Origin: Vitrella brassicaformis CCMP3155
Taxonomy: Eukaryota > Protista > Chromerida
Reading direction: 5' to 3'
DNA: 64,000 bases
NCBI GenBank assembly: GCA_001179505.1
Contig: CDMY01000405.1
Location: forward strand, 62,001 to 126,000
The notes beneath the pieces are model-generated. The model saw only the letters and a list, made by a program, of their open reading frames with translations, was not told the DNA's origin and ran no database searches. Position numbers and translations under genes: made by a program. Positions 44,001 to 50,210 of this stretch are shown in pieces. The first letter of the stretch is position 1. Every line of letters begins with the position of its first letter.

Positions 44001-44790
44001 TTGCTCGTGGGCCGTTCGATGCCGGGTCATGACCTGGACCAGCAGTTTCCACAGGCCGCCCCAGAGGAACATCGGCATCCCAGTGGGCGGCAAGGGCTGG
44101 CCATATTCCTCGCCTATGCTGTACATGTTGTTGAGCAGCACCATCGTCAATCCGAATGCAACGTTGTCACCCACGTGCCGCTCCGCCCACGACAGAGCCC
44201 TTCTCAGCGCCCCTGGGTGGCGCTGCACGAGGTAGTCGCGGGACTCGGCTCCATCGCCGCGTTGCCTGCCTTCGCCCATGGCCTCCGCGAGCAGCATCAA
44301 GGTGAACGACTCCATGTGCTCCTCCATGCTGTCGGCTTCTGCGAAGACGCGCGACAGGGACGCAATGAGGTCACGGGGCGACCCCGATACCGAGATGAGT
44401 TTGCGGGCGAGGCGGTGGGTGCCGGACTCGTCGCCCAGCCGCCAAATGGTCAGGAGCAGATCCGCCGCCCTCTCCTGCCGCCAGCTGTCGCTGACATCCG
44501 TGAAGACCGACAGCACACGCCGAAGCAGGTTGTCATTGTGGAGCGATTGAAGGGCTTCTGCTTGCAGCTTCCGCTTGCAATTAGCGCAATGCTGTTGGTG
44601 TTGGAGACGATTGGCTCTCTCGAGGTAGTGCTCGGCGAGGATGATCATGTTCAAGTCCGTCTGTTCTCGTGAGAGGGGTGCCGACGAGGAGAGGTCATCA
44701 ATCGCCGACCGGACGGAGAAATGGACCTGGAGAGGGGAGCAGCTCTTACCACACTCACTCCTCGTCGTCATTCTCAGAAGCCTTTCCACC
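41050..44790 (-). CDS. Helical (ARM/HEAT-like) protein with C-terminal RING finger; both ends approximate
   Basis: Long exon ORF 43992-44792 plus several helical exons, then AERADAQLAAEL and a Lys-rich linker. C-terminal RING: CCVCLLNEPNVILLPCRHK|VVCGECFDKWMAPMPTEDKICPEH. Confidence 0.7.
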
Positions 44791-44926
44791 AAGGGCTGAC
44801 TCGTTTCGTCAACGTCGTAGCTTGCCGTCCGGCGTCATGCGCGACGGGGAAAAAAGAGCACCATTTGCGAGCTCGAGGGAGGGATCGTTTGACGGGGAGG
44901 GAGGGAAGAGGAAGCCTGATCTGGCC

Positions 44927-47518
44927 ATGACATCCAAGCGGGCATTGTCGCAGCCATCTGGTTCGGCATCATCATTGCAGAAGGCCCGGCGCGTAGAGGG
45001 CGGCAGTTCCGCCGCAGCCGTACTGCACTTCGGCTCATCGCAACTGCGTATCGGGACCAGCGGATACAATGCTGATCACTGGGTCGGCTCGTACTACCAT
45101 GCCGTCCTGGAGAAGGGATCCAAGCAGCAGTTTCAGAAGTACACAGACAGATCCACGCGCACATCACATGCATGTCTGCGTGTCACCCGTGTGTGTGTGC
45201 GCGGTGCGTAGGTATTCTTCCGAGTTCGATTGCGTGGAGATCAACGCCACCTTCTACAATCTCCCAGTCGACAAGACGTGGCGCGGCTGGAAGGTAACCT
45301 CACAGCGCAGCGGCTGCCATGATTCCTTCGTTCGGTGTGAGGGTCCTTCCTTGCCTGATGCACTCACTGCACCTGCATCTCAGGCGCAAGCTCCTCGGGC
45401 GTCCTTCACGTATGTCATCAAGGCCAACCAGTACTTCACGCACACCAAGAAGCTGATTGTGGACGACAACTTCAAGAAGCGGTGGGGGATCTTCTGGGAC
45501 CGCTGTCAGCTGCTGGGAGAGCACCTGGGGCCCATCCTCTTCCAGCTCCCGCCCACATTCAAGTGCAACGCCCAGCGACTAGCTAACCTCTCCACCGTGC
45601 TGCCCAAAGACGGTACGCGAGCAGGCACCTGACACACACAGACAGTGACCGGTCTGTCTCTCTCTCTCTCTGTGTGTGTGTGTGTTGGGTGTGTGGTGTG
45701 CAGGTCGTTTCGTGTTTGAGTTCCGCCACCCGTCGTGGTTTTGCGAGGAGGTGTACCGCGTGCTGCGGGCCCACGACTGGTGCCTGTGTCACATCCACCT
45801 CGTCAACTGCATCAACTCCCTGGACGACAAAAAGAGCAAACAGAAGTGGGCTGGCCATATGCAGGACGGTGAGATGTCATGTCATCTGGCGCATCGCATC
45901 GACCGATCAGAATGTGCGTGTGGTGTTTATTGCAAAACTGTCCCCCTCCCCCTTCAGGTTGGCACCGGCCGCTTGATGCCGACTCGTGCTGCTCCTGGGG
46001 CGTGTACATCTGGCTCCACGGGACGCTGGGGATGTACCTCGGCTGCTACCCTTCGAGCGACCTGCAGGCGGTGGCGAATCGTATGCGGGCCTTCACGAAG
46101 GGGCCCGAGAACCGACATCGCACGACCTACTACATGCTCAACAACACTGACGGGGGGCTGCACACGGCTGACGGGGGCTGCGTGCAGGAGCCCTCTGCGG
46201 TCGTCGACGCGCGAGCCGTCGACGACCTGTTGGCAGGGCGGCAACCCTCCTTTGGGTTGCACCCCCAACAGACCTTCATGCCCGGTGAGTCAGAACCTCG
46301 CCACAACACGGCCACAGATGCGATGCGTGCCTTGCCTTGACCGATCCTGATGCCCACTCCCTTGTGTGTGTGTGTGTGTGTGCTGTGTGTTCAGGTGAGG
46401 ACCTTGAGCTCGCTGAGGCGATTCGCCTGTCGCTGCAGGCAACACACCAACAGGTACACAGGACGGTCTGTCTGTCTGTCTGTGTGTCCGTTGCTCACGT
46501 CAATTCTGCGTGTGTGTCAGGCGCCTGACATAGGTGAGTGCCGCCCTGCCTTGTCTGTCTGATAACTCACTCAGTGTTGCCGACGTGTGTGTGTACGCGG
46601 ATGTGTGTACGCAGCTGAGGAGAAGGAGGACCCTGATCTCGCGAAGGCGCTGCGTTTGTCGCTGCAGGAGACACATGAGCAGGTAAGGTACCCAGCGCGC
46701 GTGTCACACGTACACACATACACATGTCTGTGTGTCTGTCTGTCGTGCGTGTGTATGCCAATGATTGCACTGCATGCGTTGGATGGGATGGCATCCCATG
46801 CAGGCTCTTCCCCCTCCCCCCGACGAGCCCGCGTCTGGCGACCCCACCTGTAGTCTGCAGGTAGGAGGGAGGGAGGCCCAGCCAGCACTTGCCACACCAC
46901 AATATATGTATGGTATCTTCACTCTATGTATGCTGTCAGGTCCGTCTGCCTTGGGGCGCCCGCATCACTCGCAAGTTCGCGCCGTCACACACCATCAAGG
47001 TACGCTCGTAATTGTCGACGGGATGTTGCACACCACACAGACAGACAAATTCATTCCCTCCCTTTCGATCCATCGATGTGCGTGTGCGGGTGTGTCTTGT
47101 CGTGTGTTCGGTGACTGGCTGACAGGACGTGTTCCATTGGGTGGAGTGGGAGCAGCTGGGCGGCATCGATCCCAAACTCAGCCAGAGGGACAGATGGTCA
47201 CTTGTTGCGTTTCCCAGGTCAGCCCACACAGAGGGCGCTGAATAGAGACAGAGAGGGAGAGAGAGTGGACAGACTCATTCTTTCTGCAGGAAGAGATATG
47301 CAAGCGAGAAGGGTCGCCGGATTTTCGCGTACGAAGGCGCCGAGGTGAGCGGCGGCTGACAGCAGCACATCAGCCAGCCAACGTTTGTGTGCCTGATAGA
47401 TGTGGAGTGTGGTGTGGTGTGGTGTGTGTGCGCGCAGGACCTCGTGTCTGACGTGTCGGATTCCACGCTGCAGTCGCTGGGTTTCCAGACGCAGGAGACT
47501 CTCAACCTGCAACCATGA
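44927..47518 (+). CDS. DUF72 (UPF0759/YecE-like) domain fused to two UIMs and a C-terminal UBX domain
   Basis: DUF72 motifs: RIGTSGY, FDCVEINATFY, YVIKANQYFTH, LGPILFQLPP, FVFEFRHPSW, YIWLHG and YYMLNN. In-frame downstream exons: 46395-46453 (EDLELAEAIRLSL), 46521-46533, 46615-46682 (EDPDLAKALRLSL), 46804-46860, 46940-46999 (VRLPWGARITRKF), 47126-47217 (DVFHWV...VAFPR), 47290-47344 and 47438-47518 (STLQSLGF...*). Alternative ATG at 44837. Confidence 0.85.
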
Positions 47519-47910
47519 TTGATCAAGCTGCCTTCCTGCCTGCCTGGCTACGTGTGTGCGGACTACCACTGTGTGTCTGTGTGTGTATATATGTTTCTCC
47601 AACAGACAGACAGACAGACAGACATCGATGTGATGGGCATGCGGAGAGTGCGTGTCATTAACCAGCCTGTGGTGGATGGGGGGAGATGGATGTCCGATCT
47701 TGAGAGAGCATGGAAGCTTCAACTAACGGACGGCACCAGGCACCACACCCCTTCCATCCATCCATCCATGCATTCACGTAAGCACACACACACCCACAGC
47801 CACATGTACCCTCCCCTTTCAGTCGTTGGTGTTGGATGCTACATCAGCCCACGATCCGTCAGTCAGTCAGTCGTTCGCTCACTCACTCATTCCCCCATCC
47901 ACTCGGTCAG

Positions 47911-50210
47911 TCACAGTCTGGTCTCCCTGCCCTTAGCTTTTGCCCCTCTGCCCAGCCCAACCCCATCCTGCAGAGACGCCCTCGCCGCCCCCTGCTTCTG
48001 ACGCTCACGCTGACCCTCCCGCAGATAGCCCGTCGACCGCTTGGCCGGCGGACCGGGCCCACGCCCCACGCTGGGGGGGGCCACTGGGGACTGTTGCTGC
48101 TGCTGCTGCTGCTCGTCGTCAGATTCACGCAGAGAGGGGGGTGACGGGAGACATATGTCCATCCCACTGCTGCTGCTGCTGGTGTTGTTGGTGTTGTTGT
48201 GGTGGTCTTCTTGCCCGGGGCCCCCACCTCCACCTCGCCCCCCTCCCCCGGCAGTGTCAGGGCTGATATCATCGCTCTTGCGTTTGTTGGACGACGGGTG
48301 CTCGATCATCGAGGCCAATGGGCGTCTCTGCGGCGTCAGCTGGTGCTCCCTCCGTGCTTTGCGATTGGCCCTGCCCCTGGCCACCCCACTGACGCGAGGC
48401 GGTGCCACAGACTGCCGCGGGTGGCCCCGGCCCCCCATTATCTTGCCCATGAGTCCCCCCGCTCCGGTCTTCCTCTTTTTGCTGTTGATGGACAGGCGGC
48501 GCATGCCCTTGGCTGGTATGCTCTCCTCGTCGCTGGTCTCCTGCGACCGGGGCTGCTGCTGCTGCTGCTGGCGGTGGGGATGGGGGTGTTGGTCGCCACT
48601 CTGGTCAGGGGGTGGCATGGCAGTGTTGGTGTTGCGCGGAGGGGCTGTGTTGGCCGGGGCGACGGGCGGCGCCACAGGCGGGGAGATCACCTGATGCATC
48701 CAAAAGAAGAGAGACAGCGGTGTGTTTCGGTGGGTTCTGCTATGTGTGTGCGTCGGTGGCTGCGTACGGGCGTGTACCTGTAGTTGCAGGTCCATGTCGG
48801 GCATCGATATGCCGAACGACTCCAACGTCAAACGATCATGCTCAGACACTAGCGCACGATTAGCAGGGTCATCCTGACACGGACGCACACGCACAACGAG
48901 CCAATGCTCACCAAACCCCATACATACGGAACACGGAGCAGCATCTCTCTCAATGCTTTCAGAGCTTACACGCAGGATGGTCTCCATATTCCATGAAGTC
49001 TTGTCGGTGTCGGGTCTGACCACCTCCGCAAACAAAGACTCCAACGCCTCCAGTTGCTGGCGTGGGCAGGGCAGGGCACGGCAGCCTTCATGGTTGTTGA
49101 CGGATGGGATGGCTGGGGTGGGTGCGCTACCTACCTTGATGAGCATGGCTGTGAGTTGGCTCGACGCGAACTTGACAGTCCGGCCTGACATGTAGTCAAG
49201 AAACCTGCACAAATATCACATCACACCACACCCACATGGCATGTGATGGCATATATGTGAGGCCTGGTCTTTCTCTCCATCTCATCTCACGTGGTGACGT
49301 GGCGGACGGCGTCGATATCAGTGAGGTCATCCCCCACGCCAATGAGTGTCATGAACCGGCCCCTCGGAAACATCCGGATCTCCTCACCCACTACCAACGC
49401 CTGCACACACACACACACACACCATGCACTCATTGCATTCCACCCACATCCATCCTTTCTGTCTGTCTGTCTGTCTGTAGGTCTCTCCTTCTGTCCCTTG
49501 TGTGATATCTATCACCCCCACACACAGCCCCACCTTCCCCCCCACCGCTCTCTCACCTTCCACAGATCGGGGTGCCGCCACTGCCGCTTCCTGACCGACG
49601 CGTGCACCACGTCGATGCCGCACTCGTCCACAACACGGTGCATCTCGGGGAAGTGCCTCAACACACTCTTATCCCACGCCCTCTCACTCAAGTTAGTCAC
49701 CGCCACCACCTTGCCAGCCCGCCCCGCCCCACACAGGATCCGACACATGGCGCCATCCAGCCGACGGGCAGCCGTGGCGGCCGCGTCGGCATCTGCAATG
49801 CCCTCCGGGTGGCTGAGGACGCCGTCCCAGTTGAAGAAGATGAAGGTGCCGGACTGCTTGCAGGGGGTGAAGGTCTGTTCGGGCTCTCCTCCCAGGGCGC
49901 GTCCTTGGTCGTAGCGGAATGCCTTGACGTTCTTCCGCCTGCGCTGCTTCGCATGGAAGGACTGCTCCTGCTCGTGATGCTGGGTGTGGCGGGGAGGGGC
50001 GGAGTGGGCCTGGCCGGTGGGGCGGGGCTTGGGCGGCGCCTGCGGTCTGTCGGACGAGCTGCCATCATGATCATTGTGTTGGTGCTCCAGTGCATCAGAC
50101 GGCTTGGAGGGGGAGAGATCTCGACCTTCAGGCCCATCCACGCCACTGTCCGATGGCAGGCATATCGCCTTCTTCGACGGTGAAAAGAAGAACGAAAACA
50201 TCCCGGCCAT
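47911..50210 (-). CDS. HAD-like superfamily protein (alveolate/protist type) with low-complexity C-terminal tail
   Basis: TFIFFNWDGVL (motif I region), VVAVTNLSERAW (motif II), PDLWK (motif III Lys) and LIGVGDDLTDI (motif IV), followed by a TVKF segment. Confidence 0.7.

What the first reader, a model, noticed from the sequence alone, without database searches (positions are those of the whole stretch)
44927..47518. DUF72-UIM-UIM-UBX fusion: candidate p97/Cdc48 adaptor carrying a prokaryote-type enzyme
All eight exons after the DUF72 region join in frame via canonical GT-AG sites from the donor at 46284/46285, and they have no start codon of their own. The product is a DUF72/UPF0759 domain followed by two UIMs (DLELAEAIRLSL, DPDLAKALRLSL) and a UBX domain (VRLPWGARITRKF...VAFPR...TLQSLGF). 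DUF72 is a mostly bacterial/archaeal family of unknown function, often suggested to act in DNA repair. UIMs bind ubiquitin and UBX domains bind p97/Cdc48 (established). Inference: the enzyme is recruited to ubiquitylated substrates together with p97, possibly to process DNA-protein adducts or damaged nucleic acid. I do not know this architecture from characterised proteins.
Basis: partly seen in the sequence, partly recalled or inferred. Interest (0 to 1): 0.92.

Follow-up and report, generated by a model that had tools for sequence, protein, structure and literature searches.

The report
DUF72 enzyme fused to UIM-UBX tail
A transcribed gene of the alga-like alveolate Vitrella brassicaformis joins an uncharacterised TIM-barrel enzyme (DUF72) to a ubiquitin-binding motif and a Cdc48/p97-binding UBX domain; this pairing was found only in this species and hints that DUF72 works on ubiquitin-marked, possibly DNA-linked, targets.

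Summary
All 13 exons (44927-47518, + strand) join through GT..AG sites into a 499-aa frame. One cDNA contig in each of three public RNA runs runs from exon 4 to past the stop, with the letter count expected for exon 5->6->7->8.

The window is Vitrella brassicaformis CCMP3155. The public protein P0151 (UniRef 'UBX domain-containing protein') is my model plus 30 upstream residues, so the gene and both domains are already annotated, though I found no paper on them.

Pfam on P0151 gives DUF72 3e-45, UBX 3e-9 (7e-11 for the domain alone) and one UIM above threshold. The first 'UIM' is only UIM-like.

A 54%-identical paralog on another contig has the same architecture, with DUF72 and UIM in a single exon. 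This scan noted what is probably that paralog before (s1-242743). No other protein among the 150 nearest DUF72 representatives has the tail.

The DUF72 part belongs to a eukaryote/giant-virus clade, not a recent bacterial import.

The Cdc48 and ubiquitin link is a well-founded inference. A DNA-repair role is weaker: fold scores do not separate nucleases from sugar isomerases, and 80 bacterial neighbourhoods gave nothing. The best clue is a giant-virus-like DUF72 fused to an EndoIII/MutY glycosylase.

Verdict: real, uncharacterised, lineage-restricted, moderately interesting.

The parts
44927..47518 (+). Whole coding region: 13 exons, 499 aa (start codon at 44927, stop at 47516-47518)
   Evidence: Identical to residues 31-529 of public protein P0151 (Vitrella brassicaformis CCMP3155).
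44837..44926 (+). Upstream in-frame extension used by the public annotation (30 aa, ATG at 44837); probably 5' UTR or not used
   Evidence: P0151 starts MRDGEK.... The cDNA contigs that carry exon 1 begin at 44902-44928. The paralog's N-terminus aligns with the ATG at 44927.
44927..46284 (+). Exons 1-5 (44927-45138, 45212-45293, 45384-45612, 45704-45868, 45958-46284): short N-terminal peptide, then the DUF72 TIM barrel (model residues about 38-325)
   Evidence: Pfam PF01904 at 3.1e-45. AF2 pLDDT above 90 over residues 40-330. VIA-align Z 25 to 1ZTV/1VPQ/1VPY. 26 of 28 family-conserved positions are kept.
46285..46394 (+). Intron 5 (110 nt), the joint between the DUF72 part and the tail; read through, it gives a stop at 46340
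   Evidence: GT..AG. Spliced out in the cDNA contigs of X1, X7 and X8; no depth at 46307-46352.
46395..46453 (+). Exon 6: UIM-like helix (EDLELAEAIRLSLQ), a copy of exon 8
   Evidence: 65-68% identical to the exon 8 peptide. No Pfam UIM match. Predicted helix at residues 341-357.
46521..46533 (+). Exon 7: 13-nt micro-exon that keeps the frame after exon 6 (59+13 = 72 nt)
   Evidence: the 65 letters between the flanks fit only if it is included. Also present in the public model P0151.
46615..46682 (+). Exon 8: UIM (EEKEDPDLAKALRLSLQE)
   Evidence: Pfam PF02809 at 27.5-28.1 bits, cut-off 21. With the linker it aligns to the helix-linker-UBX region of FAF1 (E 7e-6).
46804..46860 (+). Exon 9: Pro-rich linker (ALPPPPDEPASGDPTCSLQ) leading into UBX strand 1
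   Evidence: Aligns with FAF1 'EQALPPEPKEENAEPVSKL'. Joints at both ends appear in cDNA.
46940..47518 (+). Exons 10-13 (46940-46999, 47126-47217, 47290-47344, 47438-47518): UBX domain with Arg in VRLPWG and the FPR loop
   Evidence: Pfam PF00789 at 42.6 bits, 7.1e-11, for residues 425-529 of P0151. PDB sequence matches to the UBX of FAF1, p47, PUX5 and UBXN2B. An AF2 model of this part alone was too poor to use.

Best explanation
This is a genuine, expressed nuclear gene of Vitrella brassicaformis. Its product is a single polypeptide with three parts:
- an apparently intact DUF72 TIM barrel, of the xylose-isomerase-like superfamily that also holds endonuclease IV and UVDE;
- a UIM-like helix followed by a true UIM;
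- a C-terminal UBX domain of the FAF1/UBXD7/PUX7 type.

Shown: the splice chain, the transcript, the three domains, and a second diverged paralog with the same architecture. Both copies being sister, the fusion most simply predates the duplication, and the tail has been kept in both.

Inferred from established knowledge of UBX and UIM: the UBX docks on the N domain of Cdc48/p97 through the Arg/FPR signature. The UIM binds ubiquitin, or a ubiquitin-like modifier, on a substrate. The DUF72 active site would thus be brought to the place where Cdc48 works on a ubiquitylated target. That is the same design logic as SPRTN/Wss1, ataxin-3, YOD1 or PNGase, which are enzymes hard-wired to p97.

More speculative: the target is damaged DNA or chromatin, with DUF72 acting as a phosphodiester- or AP-site-processing enzyme next to a ubiquitin-marked protein that Cdc48 extracts.

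My odds: real fusion protein 0.97; binds Cdc48 0.75; UIM binds ubiquitin or a ubiquitin-like protein 0.6; DUF72 moiety acts on nucleic acid 0.35.
For: - Splice chain and frame.
- cDNA contig bridging exon 4 to exon 13 in three runs, with 65 letters between 46289 and 46613 as predicted.
- Identical public model.
- Pfam DUF72, UBX and UIM all above curated cut-offs.
- DUF72 fold at Z 25 to solved DUF72 structures.
- 26 of 28 conserved positions kept, including E80, N82, K111, H118, Q152, E180, R182. In the AF2 model they sit at or within 2 residues of the C-terminal ends of strands, except H118, which lies in a helix after strand 3.
- Tail matches FAF1 helix-linker-UBX (E 7e-6) and p47 UBX, with FPR aligned on p47's FPN loop.
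- Paralog P0001 (locus L001) has DUF72 and UIM in one uninterrupted exon and an open UBX to a stop codon.
- The two copies are sister (SH-aLRT 99).
- For the DNA idea: a DUF72 in a single ORF with an EndoIII/MutY-type glycosylase on a giant-virus-like contig. Many eukaryotic relatives carry basic, NLS-like N-termini.
- Papers: Tm1631 predicted to be endonuclease-IV-like, with a phosphate site (PMC3828134). DUF72 enriched beside polB2 together with SRAP (PMC11791011).
Against: - No binding or activity has been measured for any DUF72.
- Fold scores do not separate nucleases (ASFV AP endonuclease 14.3, UVDE 13.2, EndoIV 12.6) from MbnB (14.1) or sugar epimerases (13.5).
- My sample of 80 bacterial DUF72 loci, mostly Acidobacteriota and Bacteroidota, shows no recurrent repair neighbour. 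The best cluster is an S9 peptidase in 6 of 80.
- The Arg of the YxRxHG motif, conserved in 93% of relatives, is Trp here. The paralog has lost H118 and Q152. Catalysis may therefore be altered in both copies.
- The UBX could not be modelled with confidence (pLDDT 45).
- The first UIM fails Pfam.
- The paralog's FPR loop reads MPK.
- The fusion was found in one species only.
Confidence: 0.55

Rival explanations
1. The protein is a Cdc48 cofactor whose DUF72 barrel acts on a sugar, a glycan or another small group on proteins that Cdc48 handles. It would be analogous to PNGase, which binds p97 and strips glycans from ERAD substrates. It would have nothing to do with DNA.
For: After the DUF72 structures, the next fold matches include D-tagatose/psicose 3-epimerases, rhamnose and xylose isomerases, keto-glucoside lyase, C-glycoside deglycosidase and MbnB, at the same Z (12.5-14) as the nucleases. 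Bacterial neighbours include a glycoside hydrolase, peptidases and an aminotransferase, but no repair genes.
Against: A DUF72 is fused to an EndoIII/MutY glycosylase in one ORF. Eukaryotic relatives have NLS-like basic N-termini. Tm1631 has a sulfate/phosphate site with a Tyr/His/Arg/Glu/Arg pattern (PMC3828134). The protein has no signal peptide or membrane anchor that would suggest ERAD.
Confidence: 0.2
2. The DUF72 barrel in the Vitrella copies has become a binding module or pseudo-enzyme. The protein would then be simply a substrate-recruiting Cdc48 adaptor, like FAF1 or UBXD7 with another recognition domain, or the two paralogs may work as a pair.
For: Unique substitutions at highly conserved positions. 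R248W in this gene is the only Trp among 91 residues in that column. H118D and Q152V in the paralog: Q152V is the only exception among 94 sequences and H118D one of two. Tm1631 is predicted to form a homodimer (PMC3828134).
Against: This copy keeps 26 of 28 conserved positions, which is within the normal range of the family: 13 other sequences also miss two, and 25 miss more. Both barrels are well conserved overall and model with pLDDT above 90.
Confidence: 0.15
3. The UIM-UBX tail works as in plant PUX7/8/9/13. The UIM binds ATG8 and the UBX binds Cdc48, so the protein would be an autophagy receptor or adaptor. Alternatively the UIM docks on neddylated cullins, as in UBXN7.
For: UIM-UBX C-terminal modules of this kind bind ATG8 in Arabidopsis (review PMC8181520, citing Marshall et al. 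2019). The UIM of UBXN7 binds NEDD8 on cullins (PMC3349548). The tail's best match is the FAF1/UBXD7-type region.
Against: Nothing in the sequence tells ubiquitin, NEDD8 and ATG8 binding apart. This reading does not explain why a conserved enzyme barrel is attached.
Confidence: 0.08
4. It is an artefact: two neighbouring genes (DUF72, then UIM-UBX) joined by a wrong gene model or by read-through transcripts.
For: The unspliced frame stops at 46340. The letters of exons 6 and 7 in the cDNA contigs were not displayed. Contigs carry no strand or molecule information.
Against: - A spliced joint removes intron 5 in three runs, with the exact letter count.
- The tail has no Met at all.
- The paralog has DUF72 and UIM in the same exon.
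- Exon phases match between the paralogs' UBX exons.
Confidence: 0.02

Closest known systems
FAF1 / UBXD7 (UBXN7) / plant PUX7-type UBX cofactors of Cdc48/p97
   Same: A C-terminal module of acidic helix with AxxLSL (UIM or UIM-like), a Pro-rich linker, then UBX. The best PDB sequence match of the tail is exactly this stretch of FAF1 (E 7e-6). The UBX carries the Arg and the FPR loop.
   Different: Those proteins have UBA, UBL and UAS domains upstream and no enzyme. Here the upstream part is a DUF72 TIM barrel, and there is no UBA or UAS.
Enzymes hard-wired to p97: SPRTN/Wss1 (protease with SHP/VIM and UBZ/SIM), ataxin-3 (Josephin, UIMs, VBM), YOD1/OTU1 and VCPIP1 (UBX-like plus OTU), PNGase (PUB)
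   Same: The same design: a catalytic domain, a p97-binding element and a ubiquitin-binding element in one chain. This rests on my own knowledge of these proteins and was not tested here.
   Different: The catalytic domain here is of another fold and unknown activity. The p97 binder is a canonical C-terminal UBX rather than an SHP, VIM, VBM or PUB element.
DUF72 / UPF0759 family (T. maritima Tm1631 1VPQ, E. faecalis EF0366 1VPY/1ZTV, E. coli YecE)
   Same: Pfam PF01904 at 155 bits. Fold Z 24-26 with 228-240 residues aligned. The conserved GTSG, VExN, K, TH, Q, EFR and HG motifs are present.
   Different: It belongs to a eukaryote/giant-virus clade with inserts and an N-terminal extension. The Arg of YxRxHG is Trp. 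It carries the UIM-UBX tail, which none of the 148 other nearest representatives has.
Endonuclease IV / UV-damage endonuclease (UVDE) / ASFV AP endonuclease
   Same: The same TIM-barrel superfamily: Z 12.6-14.3 over about 225-237 residues. Papers propose a related function (PMC3828134, PMC11791011).
   Different: Sequence identity is 9-12%. The three-metal His/Asp/Glu set of EndoIV was not shown to be present. Sugar isomerases score equally well, so membership is not supported.

Membership tests
DUF72 (PF01904) | Match to the family profile above the curated cut-off, over most of its length | tested here: met
   155.3 bits against a cut-off of 25.3, covering profile positions 7-205 of 217. Exon pieces match the profile in order.
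DUF72 (PF01904) | TIM-barrel fold of the solved members | tested here: met
   AF2 model with pLDDT above 90 over residues 40-330. Z 25.6, 25.0 and 24.4 to 1ZTV, 1VPQ and 1VPY.
DUF72 (PF01904) | Family-invariant polar residues at the barrel's C-terminal face | tested here: inconclusive
   E80, N82, K111, T117, H118, Q152, E180, R182 and H250 are kept, but R248 is Trp (Arg in 85 of 91 sequences).
UBX domain (PF00789), Cdc48/p97 cofactors | Match to the family profile above the curated cut-off | tested here: met
   37.5 bits in the whole protein and 42.6 bits (7.1e-11) for the domain alone; cut-off 21.
UBX domain (PF00789), Cdc48/p97 cofactors | Conserved Arg in strand 1 and the F-P-R/N loop that inserts into the p97 N domain | tested here: met
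   VRLPWG and AFPRK align with p47 IRLADG and TFPNK. In the paralog the loop reads MPK.
UBX domain (PF00789), Cdc48/p97 cofactors | Beta-grasp fold | tested here: inconclusive
   AF2 with only two sequences gave pLDDT 45. The order of strands and helix is compatible, but the model is not usable.
UBX domain (PF00789), Cdc48/p97 cofactors | Physical binding to the Cdc48/p97 N domain | not testable with these tools
   No complex prediction or binding assay was available.
UIM (PF02809) | Profile match above the cut-off; acidic run, then h-x-x-A-x-x-x-S-x-x-acidic | tested here: met
   Exon 8 motif: 27.5-28.1 bits against a cut-off of 21; EEKEDPDLAKALRLSLQE.
   No Pfam match at E up to 1. The core LAEAIRLS is kept but the closing acidic residue is Ala. 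It is best called UIM-like.
Endonuclease IV / UVDE nucleases | Closer in fold to these than to non-nuclease members of the superfamily; metal-ligand set present | tested here: inconclusive
   Z 12.6-14.3, against 13-14 for MbnB and sugar epimerases. The ligand set could not be mapped with the tools.

The most novel reading that the evidence does not exclude
DUF72 is a lesion- or AP-site-processing nuclease. In Vitrella it has been welded to a ubiquitin reader and a Cdc48 handle. The result would be a one-chain 'extract and incise' repair factor: Cdc48 pulls a ubiquitylated protein (a stalled polymerase, a DNA-protein crosslink or a damage sensor) off DNA, while the barrel cuts the exposed lesion. 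That would give the first cellular role for a large family that has had solved structures since 2004 but no known function. The giant-virus DUF72-glycosylase fusion would be the second, independent pointer.
Probability: 0.2. Interest if true: 0.8.

Novelty: new variant of a known kind. Interest (0 to 1): 0.5.

Why it matters
DUF72 (E. coli YecE, Tm1631) is a widespread family with solved structures but no assay-backed function. Among the 12 papers in the library that name it as a word, none that I read reports an experimental test of its function (most were seen only as listed).

Domain fusions are among the few handles on such families. This gene ties DUF72 to the ubiquitin/Cdc48 system. The viral DUF72-EndoIII/MutY fusion found on the way ties it to base-excision repair. 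Together they turn 'unknown' into two concrete, cheap experiments: binding of the tail to Cdc48 and ubiquitin, and nuclease or AP-site assays of the barrel.

For the p97 field it adds a new class of catalytic cargo to the UBX cofactor repertoire.

Limits: one species, two paralogs, no functional data, and the protein is already present (unnamed) in public databases.

Tried and rejected
- **Spliced protein as a query.** The spliced protein has no reference, so I searched exon pieces. I then recovered a full-length id through a search of protein representatives with the exon 2-intron 2-exon 3 open frame. The first job was lost and was re-run.
- **Relatives of the tail.** Two searches with the tail alone (residues 369-529 and 395-529 of P0151) found only the protein itself and its paralog. 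No alignment could be built for the UBX, and its AF2 model failed at pLDDT 45. I did not run a fold search on that model.
- **ESM Atlas.** Only plain bacterial DUF72 clusters came back; there is no DUF72+UBX cluster of 50 or more members.
- **Metagenome scan for close relatives.** None found.
- **Bacterial gene neighbourhoods.** With a 9-sequence alignment I obtained 80 loci. Clustering of 387 neighbouring ORFs gave no family in more than 6 loci, and the top ones are peptidases, an AMP-binding enzyme, an aminotransferase, DUF892 and a TonB receptor. This gives no support for, and no strong evidence against, a repair role. The sample is biased towards Acidobacteriota.
- **Other long DUF72 proteins for further fusions.** Only DUF892 (in bacteria) and a probable gene-model fusion with a mannosyltransferase turned up.
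- **Run X2 (another organism label).** It held nothing on the 46100-46760 stretch.
- **One literature hit** for 'DUF72' turned out to be DUF723.
- **Plastid (SELMA-type) Cdc48 role.** Rejected because the N-terminus has no hydrophobic signal sequence.
Full report
**1. What is there**

Reading 44500-48000 and joining the candidate exons in a script gives 13 exons on the + strand. All 12 introns are GT..AG and 67-126 nt long. The frame is 1500 nt (499 aa), from the ATG at 44927 to the TGA at 47516-47518. Read through, the frame stops at 46340. The 161 residues after that joint contain no Met, so the tail cannot be translated on its own from an in-frame AUG.

**2. Is it transcribed as one unit?**

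Eight public runs hold the stretch. On 44400-48100, runs X1, X7 and X8 each have one contig that covers:
- exon 4 (45703-45867);
- exon 5 (45957-46289);
- then, after a gap in the laying, exon 8 and exons 9-13 up to 47565.

GT..AG joints are reported for introns 1, 2, 4, 8, 9, 10 and 11. Run X6 shows no joints and looks like DNA.

A second laying on 46100-46760 states that the contig has 65 letters between 46289 and 46613. The model predicts 54 (exon 6 minus the GTGAG it shares with the intron start) + 13 (micro-exon 7) - 2 (the AG shared with the acceptor) = 65. No depth falls on 46307-46352. A spliced joint cannot arise from two merely adjacent genes, so exon 5 and the tail are on one RNA.

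Caveats:
- The letters of exons 6 and 7 were not printed, because the tool masks a repeat at 46353-46495.
- Contigs are assemblies, not single molecules.
- The exon 3/4 joint is not bridged. Contigs end exactly at the exon borders there, beside a second contig that shares 45703-45786 with four differences.

**3. Identity of the genome and the public record**

The spliced protein has no reference of its own. I therefore searched the protein representatives with the open frame that runs through exon 2, intron 2 and exon 3.

The best hit, P0001, is a Vitrella brassicaformis CCMP3155 protein. A search with it brought P0151 (529 aa) from the same organism, which UniRef names 'UBX domain-containing protein' and which carries precomputed PF01904 + PF00789. 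From residue 31 on, P0151 is letter for letter my model.

So the window is Vitrella, a chromerid alveolate, and the public annotation already has the same splice chain, micro-exon included. It starts 30 codons further upstream, at the ATG at 44837. The cDNA contigs that carry exon 1 begin at 44902-44928, and the paralog's N-terminus aligns with 44927. The shorter start is therefore more likely.

**4. Domains**

Pfam on P0151:

| Family | E-value | Bits | Cut-off |
|---|---|---|---|
| DUF72 | 3.1e-45 | 155 | 25.3 |
| UBX | 2.8e-9 | 37.5 | 21 |
| UIM | 6.4e-5 | 22.9 | 21 |

Taken alone, the UBX part gives 7.1e-11 and the exon 8 motif gives 27.5 bits. The exon 6 motif gives no match. It is a copy of exon 8 at 65-68% identity that keeps LAEAIRLS but ends in Ala instead of an acidic residue, so it is UIM-like.

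Against solved structures by sequence, the tail matches the helix-linker-UBX stretch of FAF1 (E 7e-6). It then matches the UBX domains of p47, PUX5 and UBXN2B. Our VRLPWG...AFPRK aligns with p47's IRLADG...TFPNK.

**5. The barrel**

An AF2 model built on 94 sequences is confident over residues 40-330. VIA-align gives these Z scores (Foldseek agrees):

| Structure | Z |
|---|---|
| DUF72 structures 1ZTV, 1VPQ, 1VPY | 24-26 |
| ASFV AP endonuclease | 14.3 |
| MbnB | 14.1 |
| Tagatose epimerase | 13.5 |
| UVDE | 13.2 |
| Endonuclease IV | 12.6 |

The fold thus places the domain in the xylose-isomerase-like superfamily, but it does not tell nuclease from isomerase.

Of 28 positions that are at least 90% conserved in the alignment, this protein keeps 26. 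The exceptions are R248W, in the YxRxHG motif, and F290L. The paralog misses four, among them H118 and Q152, which are otherwise nearly invariant. The RNA contigs show no differing letters, so W248 is not an assembly error.

**6. The paralog**

P0001 lies on CDMY01000312.1 (locus L001). There the last DUF72 exon runs without interruption into '...VDPELAEALRLSLETHQQ' before its donor. In that copy the DUF72-UIM junction therefore needs no splicing at all.

The public model stops early, at 'SFAGWAT'. Downstream GT..AG exons, in the same phases as here, complete a UBX that ends '...ATLQSLGFHCQETFNLQL*'. That copy has one UIM-like motif (no Pfam UIM match), and its FPR loop reads MPK.

The copies are 54% identical overall and 73% identical in the first half of the UBX. 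The most parsimonious reading is that the fusion predates the duplication and has been kept in both copies.

**7. Where the barrel comes from**

The nearest DUF72 representatives that carry a source name are:
- Spongospora;
- two trebouxiophyte green algae;
- a liverwort;
- a bdelloid rotifer;
- a chytrid;
- a trypanosome;
- Edafosvirus, a giant virus.

In a quick maximum-likelihood tree of 94 sequences the two Vitrella copies are sister (99). They sit in a 43-sequence clade (100) that holds every named eukaryote placed in the tree (the chytrid and the trypanosome were not in the alignment). The two named bacterial sequences in the tree fall outside it. So this is a eukaryote-type DUF72, not a fresh bacterial import.

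None of the other 148 nearest representatives matches the tail. Two searches with the tail alone found only the two Vitrella proteins. The Atlas has no large DUF72+UBX cluster, and a metagenome scan found no close relative.

**8. What the barrel may do**

No paper in the library holds both DUF72 and UBX. Twelve hold DUF72 as a word, and none of those I read reports an experimental test. Tm1631 was predicted to be endonuclease-IV-like, with a phosphate site of Tyr/His/Arg/Glu/Arg (PMC3828134). DUF72 genes are reported enriched beside polB2 together with SRAP (PMC11791011).

My own test of 80 bacterial loci found no recurrent repair neighbour.

The strongest new clue is P0072. It is a single 1509-nt ORF on a contig with Rpb2 (carrying an intein), an Arf/Ras-family GTPase and DUF2738, which looks like a giant virus. 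It joins DUF72 to an EndoIII/MutY-family glycosylase. That domain matches 1P59 at E 2.4e-15. It keeps the Asp and the four Cys, while the catalytic Lys position is His, as in monofunctional enzymes that leave an AP site.

Many eukaryotic relatives begin with basic, NLS-like stretches (my reading, not a prediction tool).

**9. Verdict**

The architecture is real and expressed, has been conserved through a gene duplication, and is uncharacterised. It is already visible in public databases and is restricted, as far as these searches reach, to one species. The Cdc48 and ubiquitin link is a sound inference from the defining features of UBX and UIM. The DNA-repair role is a reasonable but unproven reading, at about one in three.

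Interest is moderate (0.5). It is a new variant of the UBX-cofactor kind, and one of two fusions that make DUF72's function directly testable.

Noticed in passing
L002:4001-5509 (ENA ERZ26869290 ctg358499): A single ORF (P0072, 502 aa) fuses DUF72 to an EndoIII/MutY-type HhH-GPD glycosylase with a 4-Cys cluster. The contig also has Rpb2 with an intein, an Arf/Ras-family GTPase, TspO and DUF2738, so it looks like a giant virus. This is a Rosetta-stone hint that DUF72 works in base-excision repair.
   Followed up: partly
L001:7808-8148 (Vitrella CDMY01000312.1, paralog P0001): The public gene model of the paralog stops early by reading through a donor (ending '...SFAGWAT'). Two further GT..AG exons complete its UBX. 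Its FPR loop reads MPK, and its barrel lacks the otherwise near-invariant H118 and Q152.
   Followed up: yes
L001:1-2670: The gene two positions upstream of the paralog (a RING-finger gene lies between) encodes a BRCA2-type OB-fold protein (PF09103). This may be coincidence, but it is a DNA-repair gene close to a DUF72-UBX gene.
   Followed up: no
window 45703-45786: A second cDNA contig in X1 and X7, and a 209-letter contig in the DNA-like run X6, shares these 84 bases with four differences. It then diverges (in X7: ...DWCL AQIHLHNCSE against CHIHLVNCIN). That points to a third, closer DUF72 paralog that did not appear among the annotated Vitrella proteins.
   Followed up: no
window 44927-44980 and L001:6001-6050: The first 16 residues, M[T/A]SKRALS[Q/E]PSGSASS, are almost identical between paralogs that are only 54% identical overall. 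This suggests a short functional motif (targeting, degron or phosphosite) ahead of the barrel.
   Followed up: no
window 46521-46533: A 13-nt micro-exon, supported by the letter count in cDNA. Exons 6+7 add exactly 72 nt relative to the paralog's single-UIM layout. This looks like an exon duplication of the UIM with a frame-restoring micro-exon.
   Followed up: partly
window 47565-48100: In run X8 the same contig goes on past the stop codon with further skipped parts (47565->47633 and 47742->47811), reaching into the region of a minus-strand ORF (47911-49212). This could be spliced 3' UTR or overlapping convergent transcripts.
   Followed up: no
P0161; L013:3072-3572: In bacteria DUF72 is sometimes fused to, or next to, DUF892 (YciE-type ferritin-like stress protein): one fusion protein and 3 of 80 loci.
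   Followed up: partly
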